Both the position numbers and the translations under genes were made by a program. The notes under the pieces are model-generated. The model did no database searches, was not told the DNA's origin, and was given only the letters and a program-made list of their open reading frames with translations. From Guillardia theta CCMP2712 (taxonomy: Eukaryota; Protista; Cryptophyta): DNA of 64,000 nucleotides. Location: NCBI RefSeq assembly GCF_000315625.1, contig NW_005434529.1, positions 69,154 to 133,153 of the forward strand. The letters run 5' to 3'. Positions 8,809 through 63,630 of the stretch are shown here, piece after piece (within the stretch, counting starts at the first letter, position 1; each line of letters begins with the position of its first letter).

Positions 8809-9949
8809 TGTCTGAGCCTGTGATATATCCAATGAGTCAGACTCAGTGAAGAGGACGAAAAAAACTAATTCGAAATGTGCAAGACCTATGACACCCACTC
8901 GTGTCTTACGAAGTTAAAAACGATTTTGCGCTAGATCGCGGACTAAACTACGGCAAGGAGAAATAGGATAGTCCAAAAATAGCACTAGCGCTGACATTTT
9001 TCACTTTTAACTATCCAACGCTTGTCCAATCGTCTTGATAAAAAAATATCATTCTTCCAAACAAAACATCACACAATCGCACTGCACCCAATCACTTTTT
9101 CGACCAATACATGTCAGAATCACCACCCATGACACCCTTTAGAAGGGCCATAACCAAGTTAAATCCTGATCAAGACGCTCTGCCCACGGCCCACCTCCTG
9201 CTACAGCATCTACTCTCATGTATCCTCTACCTCCCAACGTCACTGCAATGTTTCATACCAACTACACCAATAATCCTGTCTACATTCCATCAGGTTATCA
9301 AGCCCCTGCCCTCCCAGTTTCTTCTCTCTCTAGTAAATCCTCACCTAAATTTGATCAAGCTCTCACTTTTGAACTCTTTGTGCCATCCCATCTTGCTCTG
9401 CTCTACGATCTTTCCTGCCTCTCTGCCCCACTTTTCATGCCGCTCTCCTCCTGTCTCGCCCCCTCCCACTCAGCATCAGCCATGCCGCCACGGCTTCTCG
9501 GAACTTCCTGGACTCGATATCGCTCCTGGCACTCTTTGGCATTTTTTTAAAAAGCAAGATTATAGCATTACAACTTAGTTTTGTCTCATGTATAAGCTCT
9601 CCAAAGAAAGTTGTAAGTGGATATTGTAAATTAGTACCATAGTTCCATTTTGTCTGGAAATGGTACAAATTATGCTACTATTTGTCAGGGGGTCGCAGTT
9701 TTTATACGATCCCTTTGTGTATCTTCATACCACTTTTAATTTTAAAGGTATAAAAGTTATGTTCAGTCAATTACTTCAGTACAAATCATATTTACATTTC
9801 GTGCTTAAAATTAAAATTCTCCCCGTGCGAGCCAGGACATCCACCACCCCTGTATTCCTCTCTTTGCAAACCGGTAGCGGGCTAGTCACAAGTAAGGTAC
9901 CCACCCCATGCAGACCTCCAAGAAGATAGGGAAAAGGGGGGTACCATAT

Positions 9950-34044: not shown

Positions 34045-34144
34045 NNNNNNNNNNNNNNNNNNNNNNNNNNNNNNNNNNNNNNNNNNNNNNNNNNNNNNNN
34101 NNNNNNNNNNNNNNNNNNNNNNNNNNNNNNNNNNNNNNNNNNNN
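34045..34144. other. Assembly gap (100 N)
   Basis: Run of N. Confidence 1.
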
Positions 34145-40441: not shown

Positions 40442-41067
40442 AAGGGAGATTGGAAGGGAGGACGGGGGCAACAAGCTATGAAGCGAGGGATATCTTGACG
40501 GGCACATGTGCGTTGCAATCCTTGTATTGACATTGCATTCAAGTATAAAACAAGCCAGCATGGAGTTCTCACACAGTGCGTATATGACTGCAGATAGTAA
40601 GAGATTTGCCCCAACGAAAGAACAACCTTTGAAAAGTTGTTGTGGTAGCTCTACGGTGTGAAGATGAGAAAGAGAAGAAACACGAGAGAAGAAAAACGAA
40701 GAAGAGAAGATGCGGGCAGCAGGAAGCGGAAAGAAGTCAGTGGCAGGAAAAATTCAAGAGGTAAGAACCAAATGCAGAGCTGGCTGGCAACGGGAGGGTT
40801 AGAAATAAAGGGAGAGAATGGTAGGAGGGAGGGAGAGATAGGCGAGAGGAAGAGAGAGGAAGGGACGGGAAAACAAGAGAGGAAGAGGAAGGTGAAGAAG
40901 GGACGGGAAGACAATCAAGAGGAAGGGAAGGTGAAGGGAGGAGGAGGGGGAATGTACTGGGGAATGTAGAGAAAACTTGGGGAACAACCCCTACCTACCC
41001 ATGCAAACTAGAACGAGGGGGTACCACAAGAATACTATATATAAAGTAGGGGTCTATGCATATACAT

Positions 41068-41151
41068 GTCAAGGTGGCCGAGCGGTCTAAGGCGGTGGCT
41101 TCAGGTGCCATTCTGTTTCGGCAGGCGCGGGTTCGAATCCCGTCCTTGACA
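41068..41151 (+). tRNA. tRNA-Leu(CAG)
   Basis: Acceptor stem GTCAAGG/CCTTGAC, A box TGGCCGAGCGG, anticodon stem GTGGC/GCCAT with loop TT-CAG-GT, long variable arm, B box GGTTCGAATCC, discriminator A. TATA-like tract ~30 nt upstream and TTTT terminator at 41155-41158. Confidence 0.96.
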
Positions 41152-41926
41152 GTCTTTTGCTCCACCGACCTGTTCCTTCTCCTCTGACCTTCACTCAATA
41201 ATGTTAAGTTAAAAATCAGTACGAGCCCCTCGCTGGACTCCAGTGACCCGGCGAACTCAGTAACACTTACTGAGACTCAGGCCTTCCGAACGGTAAGGTC
41301 GGGCCCGATAACCGGCCCGGCCCGTGACCGGGCTGATAACGACAATCGTACGTCGGAGACTGGCCGCACACTGCGGCAGTGTTTTTTTAATTTAGCTTTA
41401 ATAAGACTAGTCCTCAGTACTATGATCATGTAGTATGGCCGGTGACCCGGCGGGCCGCCACCGACCGAGACCAGACCGTCGGACTCCCCAGGGGACCCGG
41501 TGACCGGCCCGGCCCGGCGGCGTCAGGCACTGCAACTTTGTGATCTGAATGCCATTGCATTCAAGTTCAAGTTACAGTCACGTTCTGCCTTGAGACTCAG
41601 TCGACAAGTTAGCCGCCTGTATTAGGAGAACGAGCCTGCCTCGGCATGATTTACTGTCTCAGGTTCAAAAGCCTCGAGTTCCCCTAGTCTTAATCTGCTG
41701 CCCTCTGTCGGGCCGCCCGATGGCCTCAGAGAGTGAGGAGGCGCCATGCGGGAAGGGAAGGGAGGGGAAGAAGGATGAGGAGGAGGTAAGCTGGTGAGAA
41801 GGAGAAGCAAGCTTGAGACGAGAGCATGCAAGGTCACGGTCTCTCCTCATCTTCTTCGCCTCGTGCGACGCTCTCCCCGTCCCTTGCATGCTGTTGACCA
41901 AGTAGGAGCAAAACCGTGCGGCTGCC

Positions 41927-44900
41927 ATGACGTCGGTAGGCGACGACGGAGAGAGCCAAGTGAAGGCAGACTTCGTTGCTGTCAGCACAGCAGACGATGA
42001 GACCAGAGCGTCTAGCGATGTTCACCTGTCGTTTCATAGAGAAAGGATCCAGTGGCATCGGGAGCTGATAGAGAAGTTGAAGTTGGATGAAGCTGCTGAC
42101 GCTCTCAACTCCAATATCAGCCGCACCTTCAACCAGACCAAGGATGACATCGTCGGCATCCTCCGCCGCTTTGACCTCTCCTCCCGCGACAAGTCAGGGG
42201 GCGAGGAGAACGGCTTGATGGACGGCAAGAACCAGCGAGTACTGAAAGAAGCGCAGGATCTGGTGGAGAAGACATACGGGCTTGAGAAGGGTCCCACGGT
42301 AAGAAGCTGCTAGGAGAGAGAGGATGCTGACTGTGAGCTGCAGCTGCTGCTCAAGTGCATCGATGGGATGGACGGGAAGTTGAAGTCGAAAGACATCGTC
42401 GTGCAGTGGGATGACTCCTGGGAGATGATCCTTCAGAAGCTGAAGCGAGCGTTCAAGCGCGACGTGATCTTCGAGTACGAGGTGGACGGCAGGATAGTGC
42501 GAGTGCAGGACGACGAAGCGTTCGATCGAGCCATGGAGCTGGCGGAGAGCAGCGGGGGGAAGCTCTACGGGGTGATCCAGCAGGCCATGTGGAAGAATCC
42601 GATCATCGAAGACCCGGAGCCTGACGAGCCGGAGCCCGAGGAAGAGCCTCTTCTCATCACCTGCTCCGACAGGATGGCGTACAACCCTGCTCCTTACAAG
42701 TTCCTGCTCGGCCTCGGCGGCTTCGGACTCGCTGCCTGCGTCGTCGCGTGCCTGGTCGGCTACCTTGTGCTGGGAGGTCCAGGGCCATACCTGGGGGCGG
42801 TAAGCTGAGGGAGTTTGACCGAGCATGTCTGAGATTGAGCCCGCAGATCTCGGGGACGATCCCGCTGCAGTTCTTCGTGCAGTCGTTCATCATCTCCAAC
42901 TCCGACAGCCTCCCGTTCGTTGCCGCCAAGTCCGTGGTCGCCATCGCAGGGGCCGTCATGGGATGCCTGAGCCTCAAGGCCTTCATAGAGGCCTCCATCA
43001 TGGAGGGCGCTATCGCCGCCGCTCTGTGCGTGTGCTCGACTCTGTTTCTCCTCTACGTGCTGTCGCCTCTGGTGTTCAAGTTTGTTCAGAACTCTCAGAC
43101 GCACAACAAGCGCAAGGCAAGGGGGCGGAGAAGGAAGCAGCAGCGCAGGCTGCGAGATATCCCCCTCATGGTCGCAGGGCTGCTGAGAAAGTTCTCGTCG
43201 CTCCTGCTGTACGTGGCGATCCTCGGCCTCCTGCAGTATCTCCCCATGTACCACATCTCCAACGTGGTTGCCGCCAACAAGCAGTACTCCGCCATGGGCG
43301 CCATGTACGCGAGGGGCGACGGGAAGGACAACCATGTCTACTGCTCGGGCTATACCGACCCGGCTGTCGTCATCGACGACAAGCCCGCGGTCATCTTCGA
43401 GTCCATGGAGGGCTTCGGGCAGGCGCTTGCGGTCTCGGAGATCATGTCCAAGATCGCGCGCATCGGCATCGCCTGCGCGTATGACCGGGCCGGGTTCGGT
43501 TGGAGCCCCCCCACCAACATGTCCAGGACTCCCTCGCAGATCGCGTCGGAGCTGGCCTACATGCTCACAAAGAACAACATCTACGTCACCGTCCCTCCGC
43601 GCACCGGGCAGTCCAGCAGCCTGATCCTTAAGGTGAACGTGCCTGTGGTGCTGGTTGGTCACTCGGTCGGAGCCTTCTACGTTCGAGCCTTCGCTCAGCT
43701 GTACCCCCAGTACACGGCAGCCATGGTGATCTGGGATGGTCTTCCCTCAGAGGACGAGACGCTGACGACAAAGTTCGTCTCGTCAGCCATGAAGGTTCTC
43801 TCCCCCACCAAGCTTCAGCTCTGCTACTACTACCTTGAGCCCATGGGCCTCGCCGACCTCTTCCTCAAGAGCGTCATCTACACCCCCCTCCTCAACGGAA
43901 CTTACCTGGACCAGCCCCAGCCCGCGGGGATCGGCGAGAACTACCAGCGCATGTTGGCGAGGATGATCAGCTGGCCCTGGTGCGACGCGGTCTACAAGGA
44001 GTACATCGACTTGTACTTCGGCCCCAGCCCGGGCATCGCGTTCGTGTACGCGGGAGATGCTGCCAAGTACGACATACCGATGGTCGTGTGGTCGCGATAC
44101 AACTCGGTCTACCAGAACATGCTCAACGTGGTGGATGACGTCAAGTACACCATCGGCGGTCAAGACGCTTGTCTGCAGGAGAACACCAACATCCAGAACC
44201 CTGCCGTCAACCATCCGGAGGGGACGAAGGGATGGCAGTGCGTTCAGTTCCACATCCTCTCCTACTCCAAGAAGCCCTTCCTCAACCCCAACAAGAGGAC
44301 GTGCTTCGTCAAGGGAAAGCCGGAGCTCGGCAACAACAACCCGTGCCCGGACATCTACAGGTCCATGTACAACGGCACCGAGCTCGCTCCCATGCAGGGG
44401 ACCATGGTGCAGGCAGAGCTTGTCGACACCATCCTCAACGCCTGGCAGATGCTCAACTACACCGCCAACTTTCCCTCCACCCCGTTCGCTCTCGTCTTCC
44501 AAGGCTTCTCCCCGCAGCAGCTCTCGCCTCCGGGCTGCGTCATCTCCATCGACAACTTCAGGTCGGTGATCAAGCAGAAGCTCATCGCCGTGCTGGGCCT
44601 CAGGTTCGAGGGCCTCGCTCAGATCGAGCTCATCGAGGGTCCGACTGCTTGCCCGCGCTACATCTCCCGACCCGGCTCAGGCCTCGTGCTCGGCCAGATC
44701 ATCCCCGGCGAATGCCCCGCGACAATCTGCTACGACCTGAGCGTGTGCTCGACGCCATGGACGAGCGCGAGGAACATCGCGAGGAGGAAGACTGGGAACG
44801 TCAGCATGACTCCCTCCTCGAGCGAGGAGATCGAGTTGCAGAACATCTACGCTGAGCACTACATGGGCGCGGAGGGAGGAGACGGGGTAGTGCATCTGGA

Positions 44901-46601
44901 CGCGTTTGCTGAGATGGCGTTCTTCGTTCTCTTTAGGATCGTCGGGTTCAAGAACATCGTCGTGCAAAATGCCGCCAACGTTCTCTTGTGCCCCAGCACT
45001 GAATGTGACCAGCTGCCCCTCGACCCGCGAGAGGCCACGGGAGTCTCTCCCAACACAACCCAAGTGAGGGCTGAGGAGCTCAACCGCCGGAACGCCTTCT
45101 ACACACAGTGATGAGCTAGCAGCCTGCCTGTTGCCCAGCTGACGAGCCTGTGCAGGTACAATGTGACCACGATCCTGTCGAGCGAGAGGACACTCTCGAG
45201 CAACACCTGGAAGGTGATCTCCAACGCGCTGCTGCCCTCCTGCCCGGAGAATACCTACGTGTATGGCGGGGGATGTCGCCAGTGCCCTGCCAACTCCACA
45301 TCGCCGGCAGGGTCGGTGAGTGAGACTGCGTGTGTGTGCGACCGCAACTACTACATGAACCTCGTCGACTCCGAGTACGTCTGCATCCACTGCCCCGACA
45401 ACATGCAGAGCGTCCAAGCCAGCACCGCCATCACCGACTGCAAGTGCAACCCGGGATACACGGGCCCGGATGGCGTCGCCTGCACTCCCTGCCCAGTCAA
45501 CACGTACAAGGCAGTGGTGAGGACGAGAGGCGATGTCGTCGTGCTCTTCACCTCTGACCTCTTCCCAGCTCGGAGACTTTCCTTGCACCTACTGCAATGC
45601 CTCCAACGTCGGCTGCCCCACCCGGCGTTCAAAGCCACTGCAGCAGAGAAGGAGGCGCTGGTGTGCTGAGGAGCTGCTGAGGGTCTCGAGGAGCTGACGT
45701 GTCGCTCTCCTGCAGGTGAACTGCCATGCTGCCGCCGTCTCAGCTCCCGGATCGACGCCGGGGATGCCGGGGAAGGTGATACATCCCATCTTCGGGGAGA
45801 TCCAGATGAACAACAGTGAGCCCTCGCCCTCCAGCTGATTCCCAGCTCCCTCCTCACCTTCTCGCAGCCTTCGGCACCAACTGCTCCTACGCCGCCCCGT
45901 CCCTGGAGGTCTGCACAAACTTCTCAGGTCTGAGCCGGCACCCGGAGTCGACCTTCTCCCAGTTCAACTGCACCTACGGCCCCGTGAACGTGAGCACCTG
46001 CTGCCTGCACGCTTGCTGGTCAGTGACCCTCGTGCAGAGCGAAATGGTCACGATCGGGTCCTTCAACAACCGCAAGGTCAACATGCAGTATTGTATCTTC
46101 CTGGGTCAGCCGCCTGATCAGTCCTGCAAGGTGAGGCAAACAACCCCATCCCTCTGCTCACTCCCCAGCAGGCCTTTGGAAACGTCTCCCTTCAGCGATG
46201 GCCTGTGACGACCAGCTGCGTTCCGGTGATTGATGCGAGCTTGTCTGCCCTCCCTCTCTCCAGCCCCTCCCATTACTCCCTTCCTCCCTCCCTCCCTCCC
46301 TCCCCTCCCTCCCCTCCCTCCCTCCCTCCCTCCCTCCCTCCCTCCCGCATGCTGCGTTTGCTTTGTTTAATGCAGATGATATTCTTCCCCTCCCTCCCCT
46401 TCCCTCCTTCCCTTCACTCTCTTCCTTACCTTCTTCTAGTGCTTCGCGCTGTCGGGGAGCCCCCAGTGCTGCTTCCTGGAGCACCTGGTCAGGCCCTGCT
46501 CGCCGGCATACCCGGGCGGGTCTCCCGGACACTGTGTGGAGGTAGGAGCAGAGATTCCCAAGGACCCGGTAGGTCTCGAAAGACGGGGAGAGCGAGGGTG
46601 A
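41927..46601 (+). CDS. Large membrane protein: PB1-like N-terminal domain, several TM helices, alpha/beta hydrolase, Cys-rich ephrin-receptor-like (GCC2/GCC3) repeats
   Basis: CAYDRAGFGWS and nucleophile elbow VLVGHSVG (43657-43671). CRQCPANSTSPAGS..CVC repeats. Intron 45108-45156 links the hydrolase ORF in frame to the Cys-rich exons. Confidence 0.75.
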
Positions 46602-47131: not shown

Positions 47132-50100
47132 TCATGTTTCACGATGTGTCAGCTTATATGCAACTTGTTCAAAGGCCTGCACAAGCTCGACCCCGTCCAC
47201 CTGCTGTCACCCCTCACTTCAGTCGTGTCTTACCACAGACGTCAAACTCACTGCTTTCAGAAAGCTGCCGCCTCCAAGTTGAGCCAAGGCCTTCAGTTTA
47301 TCGACCTGCGCCCTTGTGCCGAAAGCAAGAGTATGAACTTTCATCTTCTCGCCGAATTCATCGTAGATCTCCTGAACAATGAAGAAGATGAGATGTCAAC
47401 ACCAAAGTTGTTGAGGTCTTACCTTCATTTCCACCTCTCCATCATGTGATTGTCCGTCAGACATCAAGAGCAGGAATTGGTGATGCTTTTTGAGATTCTT
47501 TGCCTTCCGCAACACAGTTTGAGCACCTTGCAGTGCTTGAGCAAACGAGGTTCCTCCATCTGGCGTGACTGATTCCAGCAGCGACTGAGGCGTCCTGAGG
47601 ACCCGCTGAACTTGTCTGAGAGAGGTGAGGACGAGGCTCAGGCAGTAGAGAATCATCGAGATGAGAACGATAGACAAGGAAATCACGTGCTCTAACTTGA
47701 GGTCTGAGCTCTCAAAGCTGAACTCCAACCCCATCTATGACTTGATCGTTTCCACGATCAGGTCCTCGTATTTTCCTATTGCAGCCACTTTTTCGCAACT
47801 GATTGTCACAGAAACGACAACAGAAATAAGATTTCTTGAATTGCTCTTCGCCATGATCTCGACGAAACCGTTAACAGCTTGTTTCAGATCTTTCCATGGC
47901 TCCCCTTGCATTGATCCGGATCTATCAAGTACGAGGATGCAGTGATGGAGACAATCCTGGCTTTCTTCTCCTTGCATTGATCCTTGCGAAATCTCAAGAA
48001 CAATTGTTTAGCGATGTCATTCATATTGCTTTGAACATGTTTCAAAACCTCCATTGTGCGTTGAAGTTTTGTGATTCCGTCATCATGCCTGCTCGACAAT
48101 CTCTCGTACTTTCTTTTCAAAACTTCATTTCTCTTGCGAGTGAGATAAGCATCCCAATCCAAGCCAGAAGCACTTTGATCAACTTGACTAGCTTTCATAC
48201 TCGACTTGAGATTGTTCTCAAAAAGAATCATCTGACAAGATCCTGGATCATCCTGCCGACATGTACGACCATAGATTTGCTTCTTCTCTGAATCATCTTC
48301 TGGCAAGAAGGTAACAACAACATGTACGCCCCCATTCTTTACAAGGCCCTGATTTGCACACATAAAATCTGTGCCCCTACAGTGAGATCTAGTCATCAAA
48401 GCCTTCAAGATGTTCGCCTGCCTCTCTTCATCTCGTCTGAGAGGATGTAGTATCCCTTGTGCTGCGGCAGATTTGGCTTCTGGATGTTCAGCTCTGTGGC
48501 GAATTGTTTCAGCAAATCACTGTCGTGGAAGATGATAAGCATTGCTCTCTGAAGCTTGAGCATGTCTACGATTTCACTCCGAACTCGCAAGAAAAACTCG
48601 TCCCAGCTCCCGTGAACGACTTCCAAGCTTCCACGTTGAATTTGCTTCTTGTTCAAAGTGGACGGCAAGAATGTTCGATGCTCGAAGGCATACTCCTGTA
48701 GCAACTGGAATTGAGCGTGGGAAAGACAATCCAACGTTCCCGTCATTCCGAGACAGAAGGCGTAACCATTGGGAATTTGAGAATAGAGCAACTCTCCGCA
48801 CACCGGCGAGATGTGAAGCTTGTCCTTGATCTGCTCAAGGCGAAACTGAAGGCTGACATCGCAACAGTACAAGTACGTCAAGGTAGTAACGTATCCTAGC
48901 GATACCAACAAGTTGGGAACCCCACTGACGGGGTCGATGTAGCCCAACTTGTTACAAGTCTTGTCCACCACATAGTCAGGGTAGCCAGCAAGCCGAAGCT
49001 CATGTCCCATCGGAAACAGCAGGACCGCCTGGAGCAACTTCTTGAAAACCACCTCCAACATGTGTCTAGTTAGATTTGGGAATACCGACAAGAGCAGCTC
49101 AGATGCCTGGAGAGAAGAGAGTTTCTTGAGTGCTGCTGCAGCATCATGCAAACGACTTCAATTTCTCCAGACATGCTCAATGATTAAGTAGCCATGTTCC
49201 AGGGGGTGAGAACAAAGCTTAAGATCTTGTTGTGGCCGTAATAAAAGTTTGTCTTCTCAAGTTTCATTACAATTAAATGTATCGTATGTATCAATCTCCC
49301 GAAGAAAACTTCGCTGAAAAAGATGTCCACTTGGTCCATAAGCAAGATGCAGGGCTTATGGCCATATTTGGTTGCTGGTGAGGTTGTTTTTCTTGCAGAG
49401 GAAGCCTAGAAAGTATTTCCTGACATCTGGAATTTCATTTGGAAGACTGCAAATGGTCAAACTCAGAGTATGAGATGTTCTCTTGAACCTCCAACTCGAG
49501 AAATGTTTCCCGGATTGCGACTTCGTCCCTTTCTGAGAGATATCTGCTGTAGCATACCACATCAACACAGAAGCCCCGCTTAGCTAGAATGATAGCTGTA
49601 AACCCGAGAGCAATGGACTTTCCCTCCCCTGTGTTGATTTGGATCAAACGGTTCTTCATCTTGTCTTGGTCAGAGAAGCCTCAAGATGCCGGGCTGACGG
49701 AGCCTTCTCTTCTCCACTCCTTCACTTCCACTCGGGACAGACAGGAACGTCCAGTGGGCGCAGACAAGACCCAGCAATATGCCCAACTCCTCTTCTTGTT
49801 GGGCGAGGCTTGAAGCTGATCTTCTTTTTCAGTCAATAAAGTTTGATCTCTTCAGCGACTTGGCAACATCGTCGATCTCCTTGAGAATGAGATATTTGTT
49901 CTTGGTGTATTCCTCCTTATCTCGGATGACATCCCTGATCTTATTATCATAGGTCTCTTTGTATGCTTTGTAGCATGTTTGTAACTTGTTTTGATGAGCC
50001 AGCTTTGGTTTACAAACCAGTTCTTTCAGAGCATGCTGAAAATCTATTACGCCCGCGTTTTCGTTGAACATCTCGATACTAAACATCTCAAATTGATTGA

Positions 50101-52200
50101 AGTTGGACAGAATTATTCGAGCATACTCAGTAATTGCTGCTGAGGAACTAGAATCGGATTTTGCAATTCTTTCAGAGCAATTCCAACTCGAAAATTGTTT
50201 ATGCTAGAAAACTTGCCAAGAATTTCTCCAACGCTCTTGTTGTAGTCTTGAATCATCTCTAGTTCCACACTGATAGCATAACTCTTGATGAGAAGTTTTG
50301 CAATTTGCTCTTTCAGTTTCAAAGGTGATTTGATTGTCCTGCAATTGGTCTATCATGCTTCTCATTCTGTCAATGTTCTTCTGGATCTCCTGTATGGCTA
50401 CAATGGCTACAAAATTGAACAGTTGTTCTCTTGAGTTGTTCGTTGGTTTCCGTCAAATTTGGGAAGGTTGATGCCAGTGAATTGAATGCAAGGCAGAAGA
50501 AGGCAAGCTCGTCGGATTGTAAGTACTTTGAGTCATCGATTGCCAGGCTGATTTCATTTATCACCCTCTTTTCTATCTCTTTCATCTCCTGTAGTACGTC
50601 GGTCTCCATTTCATGGAGTTCCAGAAAAATGTGCTCCGCAGTTGTTCTTTCAAGAATTTGAACATGCTCAACCTGTCGACCAGTGCAATAAACTGCTTAG
50701 CTTGAAGAAATGTATTGATTTCAGCAGAAGTTGCGTTGGCCATTCTTGTTGTGCTCGCCTAGTTTCATGACAATGTCAAGAATAAGTCGTTCAATCTTTT
50801 TGCAATTTCTCTGCCTGAGCTTCACCATGGCTCTCTCTCGCATCTGAGAGATCGTGTCTAACAATTCCTCTCTCCTTGTCTGCTCTCCATCGCGATTGTC
50901 AAGATGATTGCATCTCTGCATGCTTGTTTTGATGAGCAAATTCTTTTATTTTTGAAAACAGTATTTTTGAAAACAAAACAGTTTGAATGGGCAAACTTGC
51001 AACCTGTGGTCATAAACAAACTGTGAGACATTTCTTGTACTGCCAAACAAAAGATCAATTACCTTGGGAGCATCATCCATTTGGATTTCTCTTGTACAAA
51101 AAGGAAGGTAGTCACGATCGATGAGTTTTTTAGGTTCACTCTTAAAGTTTTCAAACTTTTTGTCGAAATCGTTTTCAAGATGCTTTCGTATGGAAAGGGG
51201 GATAGTTTTACTGACAAGATCAGCAACCTGTCTCTTGTAGTCTATCACATCTCATTGGAGCATTGTAGAATTGAAGTCCATTTTCTGCAAGATGGTTCTC
51301 ACCTGAGATGTGCGAGCCTGTGAAAACACATCACGTTCAAACAAATCAAGTTTGACAATTCTCAAGGTTTCAAAAGTGTGGACGTCTTGTGACACTTTCT
51401 CACAATTGCCTTCCAGCATAGCTGCCTCAACTTGCTGTGAAATGTGGGCTGCTCTCGCTGCTAAATGTGACAAATCATTGTCAGAGAGTGGCGTCTGAAA
51501 TGTGTCTGGATTGACATCTACAAACTTGAGTTGAGTCAATTTGAATATCAACTCTTCCCGATATATTCCTTCTGGATGCCGATTGAGAGGATCAAAGATC
51601 TGAATTAAGTTCAGCCAATCTAGATTTTCTCTCCTGGCTCCTTCCACTATCATGGTTCTGGAGAACATGAGTTCGCCACTTGGCATAGCACTGAACAACT
51701 TGATCAGAATCCTGATGGTCTCTTGCAAGAAAGCTCCCCTCCCGGGATTCAAGGGCGAGGATCGAGAGACCGCCATATTTGGACATTCGCATCAGCTCGA
51801 ACATGTTAACGGCATTCACAATCTTCACTTCTGGGCCATTCGTGTCTGCAAAACCAGGCGCGTCGATGCAGCGTAGAAGTCTCGGAGGTTCCGTAGTGAT
51901 GCTAAACAGTTGGTGAGAGTGCTCTTTCCACTTCCCAACATTGCGTTTCTCCTTCATGCGACCTGGAATACCTGATCTTCTATTTGAAAGAAGACTTTGT
52001 ATTCGTTTGATGCTGTGTTCAATGCAGTCTTGATTGCTGATCGTTGTTGAGCCATTCGTTTCACAATTCTTTGACGTTTCGACCGGTACCTGCTCTTCAT
52101 CTACATCCTGACGCATACAAGTCACAGCCTTTCGTTCACTTAATGTTTAGCTTACCATTTTCATGAATTCCAAACTGCCAGCTACCGAGCTACATTCATC
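47132..52200 (-). pseudogene. Degenerate P-loop GTPase / SecA-like SF2 ATPase / vWA multidomain gene
   Basis: GTPase: frameshifted NVG-SGKST and CIDAPGFADT. SecA-like: QINTGEGKS, LSERD, LMDQVD, GMTGTL, RGTDF, QIYGRTCRQDDPGS. vWA: LDRSGSM, GGTSF, LMSDG. Multiple in-frame stops and frameshifts. Confidence 0.75.
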
Positions 52201-52876: not shown

Positions 52877-55800
52877 ATGGAGAAGGGAAGGCGACGTAAG
52901 ATTGAGTATGTCGTAAAAGTTATTCCTTGGATCCATGCCAAGTTCATAACTGCATTTTTCGCAGATGAAAGAAGAATTGACCGAATTTCTGGTTTTGCCA
53001 AGTAAATCGAACAGGAAATTGTTCCTCCAAAAAATTTCCGAAACCGTTCAGCTGGAAGAAAGCAGAAGACCTGCATTGAACTTAGCATCTGCCAAGGCTT
53101 TGCTGCAGTTTTTCGAAGATGTGTGTTAACAAACAAGATTGCATTCTTCACTGTTTTTGAATTGATTGCAGGAGTCAAAAAAAGCAAATTTTGACAGTTT
53201 TCGTTCAGTTATGACCCTAATTTACGAGTATGCAATTCCTGAGGTAACTGTATTCACGCAAATCGATTGCTGCTAACACCATTTCCTACATAGGAGGACT
53301 CGAACTCAGCAATGTTGTCCGTATCGACATTGAACTCAGCGCAACTCAACAAGACTGTTGGAGTTGCATACAAAAACTTGATGAAGAATAATTTGAGCAA
53401 GCCGGAACCTGAAGAGGCAGCACTGCAAGCAATACTATCTTTGTTAAAAATGATTGCTTCGTTGACTGAGAATGACATTTGCTGTGCGTTGCTTCTGAAT
53501 TCTTGGCGACTTGGCAGTGACTTGTTTTTCTGACAGCTAGCTCATCTACCGCCATGGAGTGTATGACAATGATCCATAACGATTGGATAAAGCGAGATTG
53601 TTCGTTCGACGTGCGATATACCGCTTTCGATGTCTTAGGAGCATTTGCCAAAAACGTAAGTGGTTATCTCATCTGGAATTGATGACACCTCCCTTCACAG
53701 CCTGAAAATGTCAAGCTTTATTGCTCTCCACCTCGTGAAGCTGAAACGAAAATCTTCGAAATTCTTAATGGTGCAATCGACAGGTTGAATGAATTGCGCA
53801 AAGTGGATTTTGTCTCATGATCTTTCCCATTTACAGCTCTTTGCCAGTATGCGAAGCAGCCCTCAGTTGCTTGTATTCCATTTTTGAGATATTGGACAAA
53901 GATACGCTGTCAAAGGTGAATCCGGTTTTGGAATCGTTCACCAAGTGGGTAGCGGGGCGGGAGAAAAACTCTGTTTCGTGTTTTTCTGTGGACAATATTC
54001 GAAATACTTTCATGGGATGGGAAGATAAACAAAATGTCAAGGCAGCTGCAAAACTTTTATTTAAGGCAATGAACAAAACATATGAGGAAATACAAGCAAA
54101 GAGCATAGGTACTTTCAGTTGGATTTGATATCGAGTTTGTGATGTAGCTTTTGCGTGCAGTTGTCGGCGACATAGAGTATTTTGCTTCCGAGGTCTCAAT
54201 CAAGCGATTACGAATGATCAGAATCTGATTCTGTTGACAGGAAAAATTGTATATCACGTCCGAAAACCTCTCAGTCTGGCTGAGTCCTGACAGAGATGAT
54301 GATGGAGTAAGATTGCCTGATTTGTGTGATATAGGCTGAATAAGCTCCAGACAAATTCATCAATAATGCATGTATCCCTTGATCAAATTTCTGCCGCAAA
54401 CAGAATGGGAAACAAGAATTCTTTCTCTATCAAATTGCATTTGTTGAAAGACCTCCAAAACTGCTTTGGGCAGAATAAAGTGAAGAAGAATGAGGTGAAT
54501 TTTGAAGATACATGCTTTGCACTGACGTGCTATTCAGATAATCATTCATATGCGAGATGATGATAGTATCGAATCCTTTTTATGCCTCATGCCATTTGCA
54601 GAAGCTTGTAACATAACACGCTCCCAAGAATCAAAATCGACGCGTTGTGGCATACGCTAAATATTTGCAAAGTGCACATTTGATTCCATCCTTGCAGACA
54701 TTGCTATCATGGACAATCATGGCAATATCGTTCTTCCACCTCCATCAGCTCTGAGTGAGAACATCAAAACATCTGAGGCCCATACTGGGCCAACAGGTTT
54801 GCAGAGATGCTTGAGCAACAGAAATAGAACTTACCTATGGTTTGAAACGTACAGATTCATCGGCCCTGCAGCATGAACTCGATCACAACTATGAACATGG
54901 TATGACGGTAATCTTTTTGTCTATCATCAAGTGAGAGAGCATGTCAGGGGGAGAAGCTCTCTGCACACCCACAGAATTGATCGAGCAGCATAACTCTTCT
55001 CGAAATGTAATTTCCTCTGAGAGAAGCCAATCCAGCCAAAGCCATGCCAAATCGTCTCAGTCCACTTCATCTGAAGAGAAGGAATGTCATATCAGATCAA
55101 AAACTCCAAAGAGGTCCAATGAACAAGGTGAGTTCTTTGCTTTGCCACATTGCAAAATTGATGTTGTTGTGCCAAGATCGGAAGGTGTCCAAAGGTATTT
55201 GAAGTACCTCAGGATGACAGCTAATGAAGAAACCAGGTGGAAAGCGAACAGGAAACAAATCTGTAGGGAAAAAGACATCCTCAGATATGAAAGGTAAAGT
55301 TTAAGCATAATTTCAGGTGTTGCAAGGCTTTTAATCTTCAGACACAGCTGCAATAATTCAAACGTTTCCACGTCTTCCTCCCGTTGCAAATGATTCTTCA
55401 AACAAACAAATGCAAAAAGATCGATATAATTGCACAGGCTCTTCAACAACAAACCCTGTGGAGGACTCTCCTTTTGACAACAGTGACGGTCACAATCAAA
55501 CGACCCAACTGAGCCCAAGATCATATTCTAGGCCGGTGAAAAGCACCAAAGGAGCTTCGACCAAAGGTTTGCCCTCTGTCGATGCTGGCTGCCCAAGCAT
55601 AGGCCTGGGTTGACGCCCTGAATAGATAAGGTCTCCAAGAAAGATAACGAGAAGGCTCCGCAAGCAGACAAGCCGCTCGCAAGAGACGAGGAGACATCGA
55701 AGGCAGATCCTGCCCCCAGGACCAGCGCCAAAGGAGCTTCGACCAAAGGTTTGCCCTCTGTCGATGCTGGCTGCGACAAGCCGCTCGCAAGAGACGAGGA

Positions 55801-58577
55801 GACATCGAAGGCAGATCCTGCCCCCAGGACCAGCACCAAAGGAGCTTCGACCAAAGGTTTGCCCTCTGTCGATGCTGGCTGCCCAAGCATAGGCCTGGGT
55901 TGACGCCCTGAATAGATAAGGTCTCCAAGAAAGATAACGAGAAGGCTCCGCGAGCTTCGACCAAAGGTTTGCCCTCTGTCGATGCTGGCTGCCCAAGCAT
56001 AGGCCTGGGTTGACGCCCTGAATAGATAAGGTCTCCAAGAAAGATAACGAGAAGGCTCCGCAAGCAGACAAGCCGCTCGCAAGAGACGAGGAGACATCGA
56101 AGGCAGATCCTGCCCCCAGGACCAGCGCCAAAGGAGCTTCGACCAAAGGTTTGCCCTCTGTCGATGCTGGCTGCGACAAGCCGCTCGCAAGAGACGAGGA
56201 GACATCGAAGGCAGATCCTGCCCCCAGGACCAGCACCAAAGGAGCTTCGACCAAAGGTTTGCCCTCTGTCGATGCTGGCTGCCCAAGCATAGGCCTGGGT
56301 TGACGCCCTGAATAGATAAGGTCTCCAAGAAAGATAACGAGAAGGCTCCGCAAGCAGACAAGCCGCTCGCAAGAGACGAGGAGACATCGAAGGCAGATCC
56401 TGCCCCCAGGACCAGCGCCAAAGGAGCTTCGACCAAAGGTTTGCCCTCTGTCGATGCTGGCTGCCCAAGCATAGGCCTGGGTTGACGCCCTGAATAGATA
56501 AGGTCCCCAAGAAAGATAACGAGAAGGCTCCGCAAGCAGACAAGCCGCTCGCAAGAGACGAGGAGACATCGAAGGCAGATCCTGCCCCCAGGACCAGCGC
56601 CAAAGGAGCTTCGACCAAAGGTTTGCCCTCTGTCGATGCTGGCTGCGACAAGCCGCTCGCAAGAGACGAGGAGACATCGAAGGCAGATCCTGCCCCCAGG
56701 ACCAGCACCAAAGGAGCTTCGACCAAAGGTTTGCCCTCTGTCGATGCTGGCTGCCCAAGCATAGGCCTGGGTTGACGCCCTGAATAGATAAGGTCCCCAA
56801 GAAAGATAACGAGAAGGCTCCGCAAGCAGACAAGCCGCTCGCAAGAGACGAGGAGACATCGAAGGCAGATCCTGCCCCCAGGACCAGCGCCAAAGGAGCT
56901 TCGACCAAAGGTTTGCCCTCTGTCGATGCTGGCTGCGACAAGCCGCTCGCAAGAGACGAGGAGACATCGAAGGCAGATCCTGCCCCCAGGACCAGCGCCA
57001 AAGGAGCTTCGACCAAAGGTTTGCCCTCTGTCGACACTGGCGAGTCACTCATTGTTGTTGCTCGATTGGTGGTACAGATTGCTTAGAGAAGGGTTCGAAT
57101 GGAAGATGTTTGATAGATCCCTTTGACATTGATTTTGGTTTGTCACCACCAAAGTCGCTTCGACGTCCGTTTAGGAATAGATTCGGCAATCACAAGCGCT
57201 ATTCTGATCGCACCACCAAATGGGTTTTCGAGGAAAGCTCTCCGCGGAAGGGGAGTGGAGATGGTTCGCCTCCACAAGATGTGTCACGAAATGACATGTT
57301 AGGATCAACGGTGGAAGAATTTGAGGAATCACGCCCAGCGATGAAAGATGCCAAGAATACAATCGAAAAAAACCATCAAGAATTGAGTCGATTGTCCTCT
57401 AAGAAGAGGCAAGCATCAGATGATACTTCTCTCAACACTTCTGAGCGGGCAGCCAAGGTCAGCAAAAAGACAAAAGGTTCTGCAGAGAGTGACTCAAAAG
57501 TGAAATCAAAAGTACAGCAAAAACCAGTGGACCCATTTGCAAAAACTTTTCAACTCGTATGTCAGTCTGAGACCACGCCAGAAGAGGCAGATCCACATGT
57601 CATATCTTCGGATAGTGGAAAGGGACCAAAATCTCAGAAACTCAGCGAGAGTGCAATCAGCAATTTGCGAACATTGCCAAAAAGTCAAACTTCGGACTCA
57701 AGTTATCTTAACCAGTATCCTGCGAAAGAAAAGAGGGGGTCTACGATTCAAATAGCAAAGGAGGACGAGAATCTTAGCGAATGTGGTACTCTTTCGTCTT
57801 TGGAGAATGATCTCAAGCCCAAAATGCTTCTCTTCAGTCCGCACCACAAGCGCAAGTCATTTGAAGTACAGAACAAAACTCAAAAACGATTGAAAGCAGC
57901 GGACGAGCTCATTCGGATTGATGTCAATTCGTTCGACGACGATGATACAGCATCCGATTTTTCACAGAACAACATGTTTGTCGAAAAAGTTGAGGCTCGC
58001 ATTAAGCTTGCCTTCAGCCAGATGGCAAAGGTAAGTTTTTCACTTCATCTTCGTAGAATCTAATTCGAAATGCCATGTGAAGAGGAAGAGAGAGTCCTTG
58101 GCACAAGCCATATTGGGAGAGAAAGATTCAATGTCTCATGAAATTTCTGCCTTTGTTATGGCTTCAAAGGGTAAACTCGACGCAGCACAAAAGAAACATG
58201 ATTCGGAGAATGGAAGGATTACCGCACGAGGGAAAGAAATCTTGACAACTTTTACAAACGTCTACGAAGAATACAAACGACGAATGATTCACGTTCATCG
58301 CACGGTCAAAAGTCTGGCATCAGCCAAGGCGGCACGACGGGAAGTATCCGAAGTGAAGAGAAATGAGTTGTTCGATCAAGCCAAGTCTGGACCTGCCAGC
58401 TTGAAGGCTGCATGTATGGCAGAGGTAATGTTCTTCCAGCACTTGCATAAAACGTGTCACGTTGATGATCTGCAGGCGGAGAAGCTCGAGAGGCAAATGG
58501 CTGGGGACAAGACAGGCAAGGGAACAGATATCAAGGAGCTCAACAACCTGCTGGGACAACTGTTCCAAACCGACTAG
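52877..58577 (+). CDS. Probable SYCP2/SYCP3-family meiotic chromosome axis protein (helical ARM-like + beta-rich N-terminus, disordered repeat middle, C-terminal coiled coil)
   Basis: Helical exons 52970-54110, beta-rich exons 54150-54500, S/K/E-rich middle, and C-terminal coiled coil ...RIKLAFSQMAK/KRKRESL...IKELNNLLGQLFQTD*, reminiscent of SYCP3 (LAKRKRL...LQSMLF). Family call is by-eye inference. Confidence 0.5.
55540..57035 (+). repeat. Compound tandem array of exon-intron units (six identical 59-nt introns)
   Basis: Repeated ACCAAAG|GTTTGCCC...GTTGACGCCCTGAATAG|ATAAG, with introns ending at 55625, 55915, 56025, 56315, 56497 and 56787. Confidence 0.9.
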
Positions 58578-62456: not shown

Positions 62457-63630
62457 GATGAAGATGTAGATGTTGGTGCTGATGGTGCTAGTGATGAAGA
62501 TGTAGATGTTGGTGCTGATGGTGCTAGTGATGAAGATGTAGATGTTGGTGCTGATGGTGCTAGCGATGAAGATGTAGATGTTGGTGCTGATGGTGCTAGT
62601 GATGAAGATGAAGATGTTGGTGCTGATGGTGCTAGTGATGAAGATGTAGATGTTGGTGCTGATGGTGCTAGTGATGAAGATGTAGATGTTGGTGCTGATG
62701 GTGCTAGTGATGAAGATGTAGATGTTGGTGCTGATGGTGCTAGTGATGAAGATGTAGATGTTGGTGCTGATGGTGCTAGCGATGAAGATGTAGATGTTGG
62801 TGCTGATGGTGCTAGTGATGAAGATGAAGATGTTGGTGCTGATGGTGCTAGTGATGAAGATGTAGATGTTGGTGCTGATGGTGCTAGTGATGAAGATGTA
62901 GATGTTGGTGCTGATGGTACTAGTGATGAAGATGTAGATGTTGGTGCTGATGGTGCTAGTGATGAAGATGTAGATGTTGGTGCTGATGGTGCTAGCGATG
63001 AAGATGTAGATGTTGGTGCTGATGGTGCTAGCGATGAAGATGTAGATGTTGGTGCTGATGGTACTAGTGATGAAGATGTAGATGTTGGTGCTGATGGTAC
63101 TAGTGATGAAGATGAAGATGTTGGTGCTGATGGTGCTAGTGATGAAGATGTAGATGTTGGTGCTGATGGTGCTAGTGATGAAGATGAAGATGTTGGTGCT
63201 GATGGTACTAGTGACGAAGATGAAGATGTTGGTGCTGATGGTGCTGGTGATGAAGATGTAGATGTTGGTGCTGATGGTGCTAGTGATGAAGATGTAGATG
63301 TTGGTGCTGATGGTGCTAGTGATGAAGATGTAGATGTTGGTGCTGATGGTGCTAGCGATGAAGATGTAGATGTTGGTGCTGATGGTACTAGTGATGAAGA
63401 TGAAGATGTTGGTGCTGATGGTGCTAGTGATGAAGATGTAGATGTTGGTGCTGATGGTGCTAGTGATGAAGATGAAGATGTTGGTGCTGATGGTGCTAGT
63501 NNNNNNNNNNNNNNNNNNNNNNNNNNNNNNNNNNNNNNNNNNNNNNNNNNNNNNNNNNNNNNNNNNNNNNNNNNNNNNNNNNNNNNNNNNNNNNNNNNNN
63601 GATGTTGGTGCTGATGGTGCTAGTGATGAA
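62457..63630. repeat. 36-bp minisatellite (about 29 sequenced copies before a 100-N gap at 63501-63600)
   Basis: Unit GATGAAGATGTAGATGTTGGTGCTGATGGTGCTAGT. Confidence 0.95.

What the first reader, a model, noticed from the sequence alone, without database searches (positions are those of the whole stretch)
47132..52200. GTPase + SecA-like ATPase + vWA fusion: candidate eukaryotic conflict/immunity-type machine
Seen: an N-terminal P-loop GTPase (G1 SGKST, G3 DAPG), a long helical region, SecA-like SF2 motifs (TGEGKS, LSERD, GMTGTL, RGTDF, QIYGRTCRQDDPGS) and a C-terminal vWA with intact MIDAS (DRSGS...T...D). Established: true SecA translocases lack GTPase and vWA domains. Inference: a non-secretory SecA-derived motor with a GTPase switch and a vWA substrate-binding module. 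Its decay would fit a rapidly turning-over, possibly defence-related family of unknown function.
Basis: partly seen in the sequence, partly recalled or inferred. Interest (0 to 1): 0.75.

Follow-up and report, generated by a model that had tools for sequence, protein, structure and literature searches.

The report
Dead copy of giant GTPase–SecA-like–vWA gene
This stretch is a broken, non-functional copy of a real but unstudied family of giant proteins. These proteins join a GIMAP-like GTPase, a long helical stalk, a SecA-derived ATPase motor and a vWA binding domain, and occur in many protists and in bacteria that live inside eukaryotic cells.

Summary
The locus is a decayed pseudogene with at least 10 frame changes and 10 in-frame stops. 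The GTPase switch I and the invariant QPHxAQ motif are deleted, and Walker B reads DQVD instead of DEVD.

The same 87-Mb genome (Guillardia theta according to earlier scan notes) holds three intact paralogs. In each, a GTPase exon and a stalk-SecA-like-vWA exon are joined across a conserved short intron. The domain fusion is therefore real.

The modelled motor (pLDDT 90) matches SecA far better than DEAD-box helicases (Z 27.5 over 541 residues against at most 18 over about 330). It lacks the SecA wing/scaffold part. In a tree it lies far from canonical SecA, including this genome's own SecA. The GTPase model is closest to GIMAPs.

Relatives occur in many protists and rotifers, and in Chlamydiae, Legionellales, Wolbachia and Rickettsiales. 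An immunity role is plausible but untested. The only published trace I found is a passing remark in PMC3482391. First readers of this scan noted two paralogs elsewhere in this genome, and nobody had followed them up. No reads could be examined.

The parts
47132..52147 (-). The whole pseudogene. The N-terminal limit is uncertain. The 3' end is the TGA stop at 47132-47134.
   Evidence: tblastn and frameshift-aware alignment to intact paralogs. Only four loci of the family exist in the genome, and this is the only broken one.
51585..51953 (-). Remnant of the GIMAP-like GTPase domain: G1 GSGKST 51918-51935, G3 DAPGF 51850-51864, and the conserved IQIFDPL 51585-51605. About 53 codons between G1 and G3 (switch I) are deleted. 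The frame changes on both sides of the G3 segment.
   Evidence: Domain class comes from the model of the C50 paralog.
50135..51584 (-). Remnant of the helical stalk, including the position of the conserved intron 1 (about 51060-50990). In-frame stops: TGA 51252, TAA 50946, TGA 50721, TAA 50697, TGA 50370. Frameshifts near 50347 and 50165.
   Evidence: The stalk of the paralog is rich in L, E, K and Q, and Pfam finds no domain in it.
48031..50134 (-). Remnant of the SecA-like motor.
- Motif I TGEGKS 49615-49632
- Motif Ia LSERD 49525-49539
- Walker B mutated to LLMDQVD 49325-49345
- Motif III GMTGTL 48732-48749
- Motif V RGTDF 48364-48378
- Motif VI GRTCRQDDPGS 48238-48270

Lesions:
- frameshifts at 49672, about 49455, two around Walker B, and 48427
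- stops TGA 49829, TAA 49356, TGA 49257, TGA 49158
- a 6-codon deletion of the invariant QPHxAQ motif (49673-49699 reads RQPGILRLL)
- about 8 codons lost before motif V
47135..47992 (-). vWA domain with MIDAS residues: DRSGSM 47909-47926, GGTSF 47543-47557, MSDGQ 47450-47464. It carries an in-frame TAG at 47735-47737 and about 165 extra bases relative to paralog C34. There is a frameshift near 47999 at its start.
47372..47422 (-). A 51-nt GT-AG intron after ...EVEMK. It sits at the same position as an intron in paralog C34.
47201..47251 (-). A 51-nt GT-AG intron before the last exon (VDGVELVQAFEQVAYKLTHRET*). It sits at the same position as an intron in paralog C34.

Best explanation
The locus is a dead paralog (pseudogene) of a four-member gene family in this alga. 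It makes no working protein.

The intact members encode proteins of about 2,300-3,000 residues. Their parts, in order, are:
- in two of three copies, a roughly 650-residue N-terminal region with no recognised domain
- a GIMAP/AIG1-like GTPase
- a helical stalk of about 1,000 residues
- a SecA-derived ATPase motor (NBD1, an insert of about 150 residues at the place of SecA's preprotein-binding domain, NBD2, and one long scaffold-like helix)
- a C-terminal vWA domain with a MIDAS site

Shown here: the domain order, the SecA-type fold and motifs, the absence of SecA's wing, scaffold and two-helix-finger part, the separation from canonical and plastid-type SecA, and the decay of this copy.

Inferred, at about 35%: the family is a cytosolic, SecY-independent protein-remodelling machine. 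In this reading the vWA/MIDAS domain seizes a target protein. The SecA-type clamp and motor use ATP to pull on it or unfold it, much as ATPase and vWA work together in midasin/Rea1 or MoxR-vWA systems. The GIMAP-like GTPase gates assembly or dimerisation on a surface. The biological setting is probably host-microbe conflict.
For: Pseudogene:
- Frame changes occur where paralog coordinates stay contiguous, so no intron can account for them.
- Stops lie opposite conserved residues.
- Invariant motifs are lost: the QPHxAQ deletion, Walker B E to Q, and switch I.
- This copy has the longest end branch of the four copies, 0.46 against 0.23-0.36.

Family and fusion:
- Three intact paralogs have open frames of 1,000-1,800 aa.
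- Intron 1 is conserved, at 57 nt in C50 and 53 nt in C26 and at the same position in C34.
- Single-ORF homologues carry MMR_HSR1/AIG1, SecA_DEAD and VWA together.
- 46 of the 120 listed homologues match the GTPase domain.

SecA-like motor:
- The family profile hits SecA chains at E 4e-24, against 1e-3 for the DEAD-box helicase Mss116.
- The AF2 model has pLDDT 90.3.
- The top 36 Foldseek hits are all SecA or SecA2.
- VIA gives Z 27.5 with 541 aligned residues, against at most 18.2 with about 330 for DEAD-box proteins.

Not canonical SecA:
- Pfam finds no SecA_PP_bind or SecA_SW.
- The tree separates the two groups.

GTPase: AF2 pLDDT 88.9, and the nearest structures are GIMAP7, 5, 1 and 2 at E 8e-8 to 1e-5.

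vWA: it is above the Pfam cut-off in intact C34, at 43.5 bits.
Against: - The lesions are therefore not verified at read level. Transcription of this locus and splicing of the paralogs are inferred only.
- No member of the family has been studied experimentally, so the mechanism rests on analogy.
- The substrate of the motor could be nucleic acid rather than polypeptide.
- The G4 guanine-specificity motif is degenerate ([ST][KHQR] without Asp), so 'GTPase' is not proven.
- The G-domain dimer prediction gave no verdict.
Confidence: 0.85

Rival explanations
1. The gene is functional, and the apparent frameshifts and stops are assembly errors or are bypassed by unusual decoding or editing.
For: No read-level check was possible. 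The two terminal introns and the last two exons are still intact and in frame.
Against: There are at least 10 frame changes and 10 stops of all three kinds (TGA, TAA, TAG) within 5 kb. The neighbouring 787-aa ORF and the three paralogs are uninterrupted. Residues invariant across 52 homologues are deleted or changed. All three stop codons cannot be reassigned.
Confidence: 0.04
2. The GTPase and the SecA-like/vWA parts are separate neighbouring genes, not one protein.
For: In the paralogs a stop codon separates the two long ORFs. No RNA evidence for splicing was obtained.
Against: The gap is a 53-57 nt GT...CAG element at the same codon in all three paralogs, flanked by conserved sequence (...DTP[STQ] | V[KS]xFQT...). 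Homologues in other eukaryotes and in bacteria have both parts in one uninterrupted ORF.
Confidence: 0.03
3. The motor is a recent offshoot of the alga's plastid-type SecA and still serves protein secretion or import.
For: It has SecA-type motifs and fold.
Against: The genome's genuine SecA (C232) matches SecA_DEAD at 412 bits over profile positions 12-289. The paralogs score 29-44 bits over part of the profile. In the tree the genuine SecA groups with bacterial SecA (100*), and the family sits beyond a branch of 1.58 changes per site. No wing, scaffold or two-helix-finger region is present, and a vWA domain follows the motor directly.
Confidence: 0.02
4. The intact family members act on nucleic acid. 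In this reading the SF2 motor is a helicase or translocase sensor in the manner of RIG-I-like receptors, and not a polypeptide motor.
For: SecA belongs to the SF2 helicase-like ATPases. Some database names call relatives 'helicase-related'. One homologue carries a SAP domain, which is a DNA/RNA-binding module. DinG, RIG-I/MDA5 and DEAD-box structures are the next-best matches.
Against: The model aligns to SecA over about 200 more residues than to any helicase, and this stretch includes the region where SecA holds its polypeptide clamp. Motif VI (GRTxRQGDPGS) is SecA-specific.
Confidence: 0.25
5. The family originated as an effector of intracellular bacteria and reached eukaryotes by gene transfer, or moved in the other direction. 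The algal copies would then be domesticated or leftover transfers without an immune role.
For: Close relatives lie in large contigs or chromosomes of Chlamydiae, Legionellales, Wolbachia and other intracellular bacteria. Bacterial and eukaryotic rows interleave in the tree. The family genes have a lower GC content (0.44-0.51) than their flanks. PMC3482391 lists GIMAP-type GTPase and SecA-like helicase-related domains among Amoebophilus effectors.
Against: The direction of transfer cannot be read from an unrooted, interleaved tree. Many rows labelled eukaryotic come from unnamed metagenome contigs, and one is identical to a Chlamydiae MAG protein. The algal genes have spliceosomal introns and form one clade.
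Confidence: 0.3

Closest known systems
Canonical SecA / SecA2 preprotein translocase ATPase (for example B. subtilis SecA, PDB 6itc and 2ibm)
   Same: Both have two RecA-like nucleotide-binding domains with SecA-type motifs (TGEGK[ST], LSxRD, DEVD, GxTGT, GRGTD, GRxxRQGDPGS). Both have an insert in NBD1 at the position of the preprotein cross-linking domain, and a long helix after NBD2. Structural match: Z 27.5 over 541 residues.
   Different: Here there is no sequence match to SecA_PP_bind or SecA_SW, and no wing domain, two-helix finger or C-terminal tail. The motor is embedded in a 2,300-3,000-aa protein with a GTPase, a stalk and a vWA domain. It is phylogenetically remote from SecA. The window copy is also broken.
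GIMAP/AIG1 GTPases (human GIMAP7, GIMAP5, GIMAP2) and their relatives Toc34, mitofusin/BDLP and IRG
   Same: The P-loop, the switch I Thr, and G3 DxPGF followed by a conserved helix are shared. The nearest solved folds are GIMAPs (E 8e-8), followed by mitofusins, IRGs and Toc34. Pfam AIG1 and MMR_HSR1 give weak hits.
   Different: Here it is a domain of a giant protein. Pfam AIG1 stays below its cut-off. The G4 motif is degenerate. The window copy has lost switch I.
ATPase-plus-vWA/MIDAS remodelling machines (midasin/Rea1, MoxR-vWA pairs, Mg-chelatase ChlI/ChlD). This comparison comes from general knowledge and is an analogy only.
   Same: An NTP-driven motor is coupled to a vWA domain whose MIDAS site grips a partner.
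   Different: Those motors are AAA+ rings, whereas this one is an SF2/SecA-type motor. No homology between the motors was found or claimed.
Non-canonical bacterial SecA_DEAD proteins: 'secondary SecA_DEAD' proteins (PMC4452313), giant Omnitrophota and actinobacterial proteins with SecA domains (bioRxiv 10.1101/2023.11.21.568195), and Amoebophilus effectors with GIMAP-type GTPase and SecA-like helicase-related domains (PMC3482391)
   Same: In all of them a SecA-derived motor lacking the wing/scaffold part has been recruited into large multidomain proteins. Bacterial giants from Parachlamydiaceae and Legionellales share the GTPase-spacer-SecA-like order.
   Different: The shorter bacterial SecA_DEAD proteins branch outside the family. 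The bacterial giants examined here lack the vWA domain. None of these papers describes the eukaryotic family.

Membership tests
Canonical SecA translocase | DEAD-type motor (NBD1 + NBD2) with SecA-specific motifs and fold | tested here: met
   SecA_DEAD is above its cut-off in the window piece and in all paralogs. The family profile hits SecA chains at E 4e-24. Foldseek and VIA both rank SecA first.
Canonical SecA translocase | Preprotein cross-linking domain (Pfam SecA_PP_bind, PF01043) | tested here: inconclusive
   No Pfam hit even at E<=10 on the 171-aa insert. However, an insert of about 150 residues occupies the same position, and the model aligns to SecA over about 200 more residues than to helicases. 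The insert could not be folded or searched on its own.
Canonical SecA translocase | Helical scaffold + wing + two-helix finger (Pfam SecA_SW, PF07516), needed for action at SecY | tested here: not met
   No Pfam hit. After NBD2 there is one long helix (model residues 645-686), and the vWA domain begins about 25 residues later.
Canonical SecA translocase | Groups with bacterial or plastid SecA in a tree | tested here: not met
   Canonical SecA, including the genome's own copy on C232, forms a separate clade (100*). The family lies beyond a branch of 1.58 (quick LG+G4 tree, 48 rows).
GIMAP/AIG1-type GTPase | G1 P-loop, switch I Thr, G3 DxxG | tested here: met
   These are invariant in 29 aligned family members. 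In the window copy G1 and G3 remain, but switch I is deleted.
GIMAP/AIG1-type GTPase | Guanine-specificity motif (G4) and the curated Pfam AIG1 score | tested here: inconclusive
   Only [ST][KHQR] is found at the G4 position, without the Asp. AIG1 scores 25.1 bits against a cut-off of 27. The nearest solved folds are GIMAP7, 5, 1 and 2.
vWA domain with MIDAS | DxSxS ... T ... D metal site and a Pfam VWA match | tested here: met
   DRSGSM, GGTSF and SDG are present in the window. The window pieces score below the cut-off because the domain is split. Intact C34 scores 43.5 bits on VWA_2. The window domain is interrupted by a TAG and an insertion.
Unnamed GTPase-stalk-SecA-like family (this genome's C26, C50 and C34 and their relatives) | Same domain order, and clusters with the family in a tree | tested here: met
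   The order G1, G3, stalk, motor, vWA is collinear with the paralogs. The four copies of this genome form one clade (100*).
Functional protein-coding gene | Uninterrupted reading frame after removal of introns | tested here: not met
   At least 10 frame changes and 10 in-frame stops lie outside any possible intron.
Known anti-phage or prokaryotic defence systems (PADLOC) | Significant match to a defence-system protein model | tested here: not met
   The motor-vWA exons give no hit. The GTPase exon gives only P-loop-level hits, with LeoBC at E 5.8e-5 as the best.

The most novel reading that the evidence does not exclude
The intact relatives of this pseudogene may define a class of cytosolic, SecY-independent SecA-type polypeptide motors. 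In this reading the motor is gated by a GIMAP-like GTPase and aimed by a vWA/MIDAS or other swappable end domain. Protists would use it in cell-autonomous immunity, and their intracellular bacteria (Chlamydiae, Legionellales, Rickettsiales) would have copied or donated it as effectors.
Probability: 0.2. Interest if true: 0.8.

Novelty: new member of a known kind. Interest (0 to 1): 0.42.

Why it matters
The locus itself matters little, because it is a gene relic. The family it points to is worth attention. SecA is known as a bacterial and plastid secretion motor, yet here a SecA-type motor sits inside giant cytosolic proteins of protists, rotifers and intracellular bacteria. It is coupled to a GTPase of the kind used in vertebrate and plant immunity. 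No member has been studied. If the motor still threads polypeptides, this would be a new use of that mechanism, and probably one piece of host-symbiont conflict. This genome offers three intact copies and one dead copy, which makes a small and tractable set for such work.

Tried and rejected
There is therefore no read-level check of the lesions and no expression data.
- Complex prediction on two copies of the G domain with GTP gave 'no answer' (score 0.31 against a mark of 0.32). This counts neither for nor against dimerisation.
- PADLOC scan: nothing beyond P-loop-level hits.
- phmmer of the GTPase region against PDB sequences: nothing significant.
- Pfam on the insert at the PPXD position: blank.
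- Pfam on the roughly 650-aa N-terminal region of C50 and C26: no domain. No homologue of that region was found among the 120 retrieved proteins, in the window or upstream of C34.
- A first tree with the mixture model did not finish in time, and hmmalign trimmed canonical SecA too hard. I replaced it with a MAFFT-aligned, LG+G4 quick tree of 48 rows. It left out 34 of the 52 A1 rows, 46 of the 56 shorter bacterial rows and 5 of the 19 bacterial family rows. Support values are SH-aLRT only.
- A 71-nt pyrimidine-rich GT...CAG stretch inside the vWA insertion (47686-47616) was considered as an intron and rejected, because removing it breaks the frame.
- Joined (spliced) protein models were not sent to any search tool; exons were searched separately by reference. 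For the tree only, window pieces were concatenated inside a script with X at every break.
- The large representative-protein search was not used.
Full report
**What is at the locus.** The window is G000:C145:69154-133153 of an 87.1-Mb, 669-contig assembly. Earlier notes of this scan name the organism Guillardia theta. I could not confirm the name with a tool, though the size fits what I recall of that genome. On the minus strand between about 52.15 and 47.13 kb there is no long ORF. There is a chain of ORF fragments of 60-250 aa. Pfam finds SecA_DEAD above its cut-off in 49435-49659 (E 3.4e-8). It gives sub-threshold P-loop_SecA and VWA hits in the following pieces, and nothing in the GTPase pieces.

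**It is a pseudogene.**
- The genome holds exactly four loci of this family: C26, C50 and C34, which are intact, and this one.
- tblastn of the intact proteins on the window gives collinear segments whose frame changes while the paralog coordinates stay contiguous, for example 49673/49671, 49450/49445 and 48408/48435. No intron can explain this.
- A frameshift-aware alignment, together with direct reading of the frames, gives frame changes near 51900-51864, 51744, 50347, 50165, 49672, 49455, twice around Walker B (49345-49260), 48427 and 47999.
- The same analysis gives in-frame stops at 51252 (TGA), 50946 (TAA), 50721 (TGA), 50697 (TAA), 50370 (TGA), 49829 (TGA), 49356 (TAA), 49257 (TGA), 49158 (TGA) and 47735 (TAG). 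The stops at 49257 and 49158 align opposite paralog residues; those at 49829, 49356 and 47735 fall in short insertions.
- Functionally critical residues are gone. About 53 codons between G1 and G3, which hold the invariant switch I Ser/Thr, are deleted. Six codons of the invariant QPHxAQ motif are deleted. Walker B reads DQVD instead of DEVD. About eight codons before motif V are missing.
- By contrast, two 51-nt GT-AG introns in the vWA part (47422-47372 and 47251-47201) and the last two exons are preserved, at the same positions as in C34.
- An insertion of about 165 nt in the vWA domain remains unexplained.
Their number, the three kinds of stop codon, and the intact neighbouring ORFs make assembly error very unlikely.

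**The fusion is real in the intact copies.**
- In C50 a 1,215-aa ORF (N-terminal region + GTPase + start of stalk) is followed after 57 nt by a 1,816-aa ORF (stalk + SecA-like motor + vWA).
- In C26 the two ORFs (1,199 and 1,006 aa) are 53 nt apart, and C34 is built the same way.
- In all three the gap begins with GT and ends with CAG. It lies between conserved ...(A/D)TP(S/T/Q) and V(K/S)xFQT....
- I did not submit joined models to any search tool. Exons were analysed separately.
- Independent support comes from homologues that carry all parts in one ORF. P0001 (2,299 aa) has MMR_HSR1 at 286-416, SecA_DEAD at 1332-1480 and VWA at 2121-2286. P0009 and P0015 are similar.
- Their contigs show split HSP70 and Kelch genes, so they are eukaryotic contigs from metagenomes.
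- C34 and the window copy lack the roughly 650-aa N-terminal region of C50 and C26.

**The motor.**
- An alignment of 52 motor domains shows the invariant motifs TGEGKS, LSxRD, DEVDxF, GRGxD and GRxxRQG, and the nearly invariant GxTGTL and GRGTDF.
- Its profile hits SecA and SecA2 chains at E 4e-24 to 6e-16. The next family, the DEAD-box helicase Mss116, scores 1e-3.
- The AF2 model of the C34 motor has mean pLDDT 90.3 and pTM 0.89.
- The 36 best Foldseek matches are all SecA or SecA2, at E 3e-20 to 2e-10.
- VIA-align gives Z 27.5 with 541 aligned residues (6itc_A, chain residues 14-620), against Z of at most 18.2 with about 330 residues for eIF4A-type helicases. The extra residues include the region where SecA has its preprotein-binding insert and the first scaffold helix.
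- Pfam detects neither SecA_PP_bind nor SecA_SW. The vWA domain follows the single long helix almost directly. The parts SecA uses at the SecY channel are therefore absent.

**The GTPase.** The domain is conserved in 46 of the 120 retrieved homologues. It has invariant G1, switch I S/T and G3 DxPG, and a degenerate G4. The AF2 model (pLDDT 88.9) is closest to GIMAP7, 5, 1 and 2 (E 8e-8 to 1e-5), then to mitofusins, IRGs, Toc34 and dynamin-like proteins. Pfam AIG1 and MMR_HSR1 hits are marginal.

**Distribution and phylogeny.**
- The word search returned 333 proteins at E<=1e-5. The named ones come from Hexamita inflata (many copies), bdelloid rotifers, Reticulomyxa, Arcella, Blepharisma, Ectocarpus, Chrysophaeum and Heterostelium.
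- Their extra domains vary: VWA in about 21 of the 120 listed, and also PARP, SAP, kinase, Sel1, MORN and DnaJ.
- Within this genome C50 ends in a VWA_4-type domain, while C34 and the window copy have a classical VWA.
- A pattern scan of 185,579 prokaryotic species genomes found 134 relatives. They come overwhelmingly from bacteria that live inside eukaryotic cells: Parachlamydiaceae and other Chlamydiae, Legionellales and Coxiella, Wolbachia, Tisiphia, Bandiella, Holosporaceae and Mycoavidus.
- The best of these are single ORFs of 2,500-2,700 aa on large contigs or chromosomes, with the same GTPase-spacer-SecA-like order but without vWA.
- These genomes also hold a normal SecA.
- In a 48-row tree, canonical SecA, including this alga's own SecA on C232, is one clade (100*). 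Shorter bacterial SecA_DEAD proteins branch next. The family sits beyond a branch of 1.58 (100*).
- The four copies of this genome are monophyletic (100*), and the window copy is nearest to C34 (55% identity).
- Bacterial and presumed eukaryotic rows interleave, which implies transfers of unknown direction.
- One caution applies. Unnamed metagenome proteins were labelled 'euk' without proof, and one of them (P0018) is identical to a Chlamydiae MAG protein.

**How it probably works.** The window copy does nothing. For the intact family, the following is shown: a SecA-type ATPase with the clamp region, a GIMAP-like NTPase, a long helical stalk rich in L, E, K and Q, and an intact MIDAS vWA domain. 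From this I infer a cytosolic protein-remodelling or protein-pulling machine aimed by its vWA domain and gated by the GTPase (about 35%). A nucleic-acid-directed helicase-like role is the main alternative (about 25%). A conflict or immunity setting is suggested by the lineage-specific expansions, the swapped end domains, the GIMAP-type GTPase and the link with intracellular bacteria. No test supports it directly. PADLOC gave nothing, and the dimer prediction gave no verdict.

**What is known.** In the searchable literature I found no description of the eukaryotic family. The related remarks are these:
[quoted passage not shown] - 'Secondary SecA_DEAD domain proteins' occur in several bacterial phyla (PMC4452313).
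- Giant Omnitrophota and actinobacterial proteins have SecA domains that lack the scaffold and wing (bioRxiv 10.1101/2023.11.21.568195).
- SecA-like ATPase domains occur in giant actinobacterial toxins (PMC8195603).

Databases already label relatives as 'SecA family profile domain-containing' or 'helicase-related'. An ESM Atlas look-up points to eukaryotic SecA_DEAD clusters in rotifers, arthropods and chordates (a lead only).

**Verdict.** It is unproven as to immunity. The locus is an ordinary pseudogene of an interesting and essentially unstudied family. First readers of this scan noted two of its paralogs on other DNA of the same genome, and those notes have not been followed up.

Noticed in passing
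L010 (C50) 4347-9797:- versus L011 (C34) 4676-9787:-: Paralogs of one genome end in different vWA types. C50 has VWA_4 (PF25106), while C34 and the window copy have the classical VWA/VWA_2. The C-terminal module has therefore been exchanged within the family.
   Followed up: partly
window 47132-52125; C50, C34 and C26 genes: The family genes are poorer in GC (0.44-0.51) than their flanks (0.45-0.60). This could reflect foreign origin, or simply the Lys/Glu/Leu-rich stalk.
   Followed up: no
L022-L040, L049 (bacterial loci): Giant ORFs of 1,400-3,900 aa with a divergent SecA_DEAD domain occur in several copies per genome in Chlamydiae and Legionellales. One Chlamydiae chromosome has at least five, besides its normal SecA. 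The Parachlamydiaceae protein also shows a weak LRR hit.
   Followed up: partly
window 42748-45111 (+) and 45163-45669 (+): An uninterrupted 787-aa ORF at GC 0.60 lies next to the pseudogene. It has only weak alpha/beta-hydrolase hits and a hydrophobic, Arg/Lys-rich N-terminus. A Cys-rich 'CxxCPxN' repeat ORF follows it.
   Followed up: no
window 41067-41152 (+): A tRNA-Leu (CAG) gene of 86 nt.
   Followed up: no
window 55496-57052 (-): A repeat array is open in all three minus-strand frames for about 1.5 kb, with repeated units such as QPASTEGKPLVEAPLALVLGAGSAFDVSSSLASGLS.
   Followed up: no
window 34045-34144 and 63501-63600: Two runs of 100 N, which are assembly gaps.
   Followed up: no
G000:C126:159059-163890 and C3:1106484-1106942: Distant relatives of the family's GTPase domain (29-31% identity) lie in other long open frames of about 950-1,040 aa. 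The genome therefore has further GIMAP-like GTPase genes outside this family.
   Followed up: no
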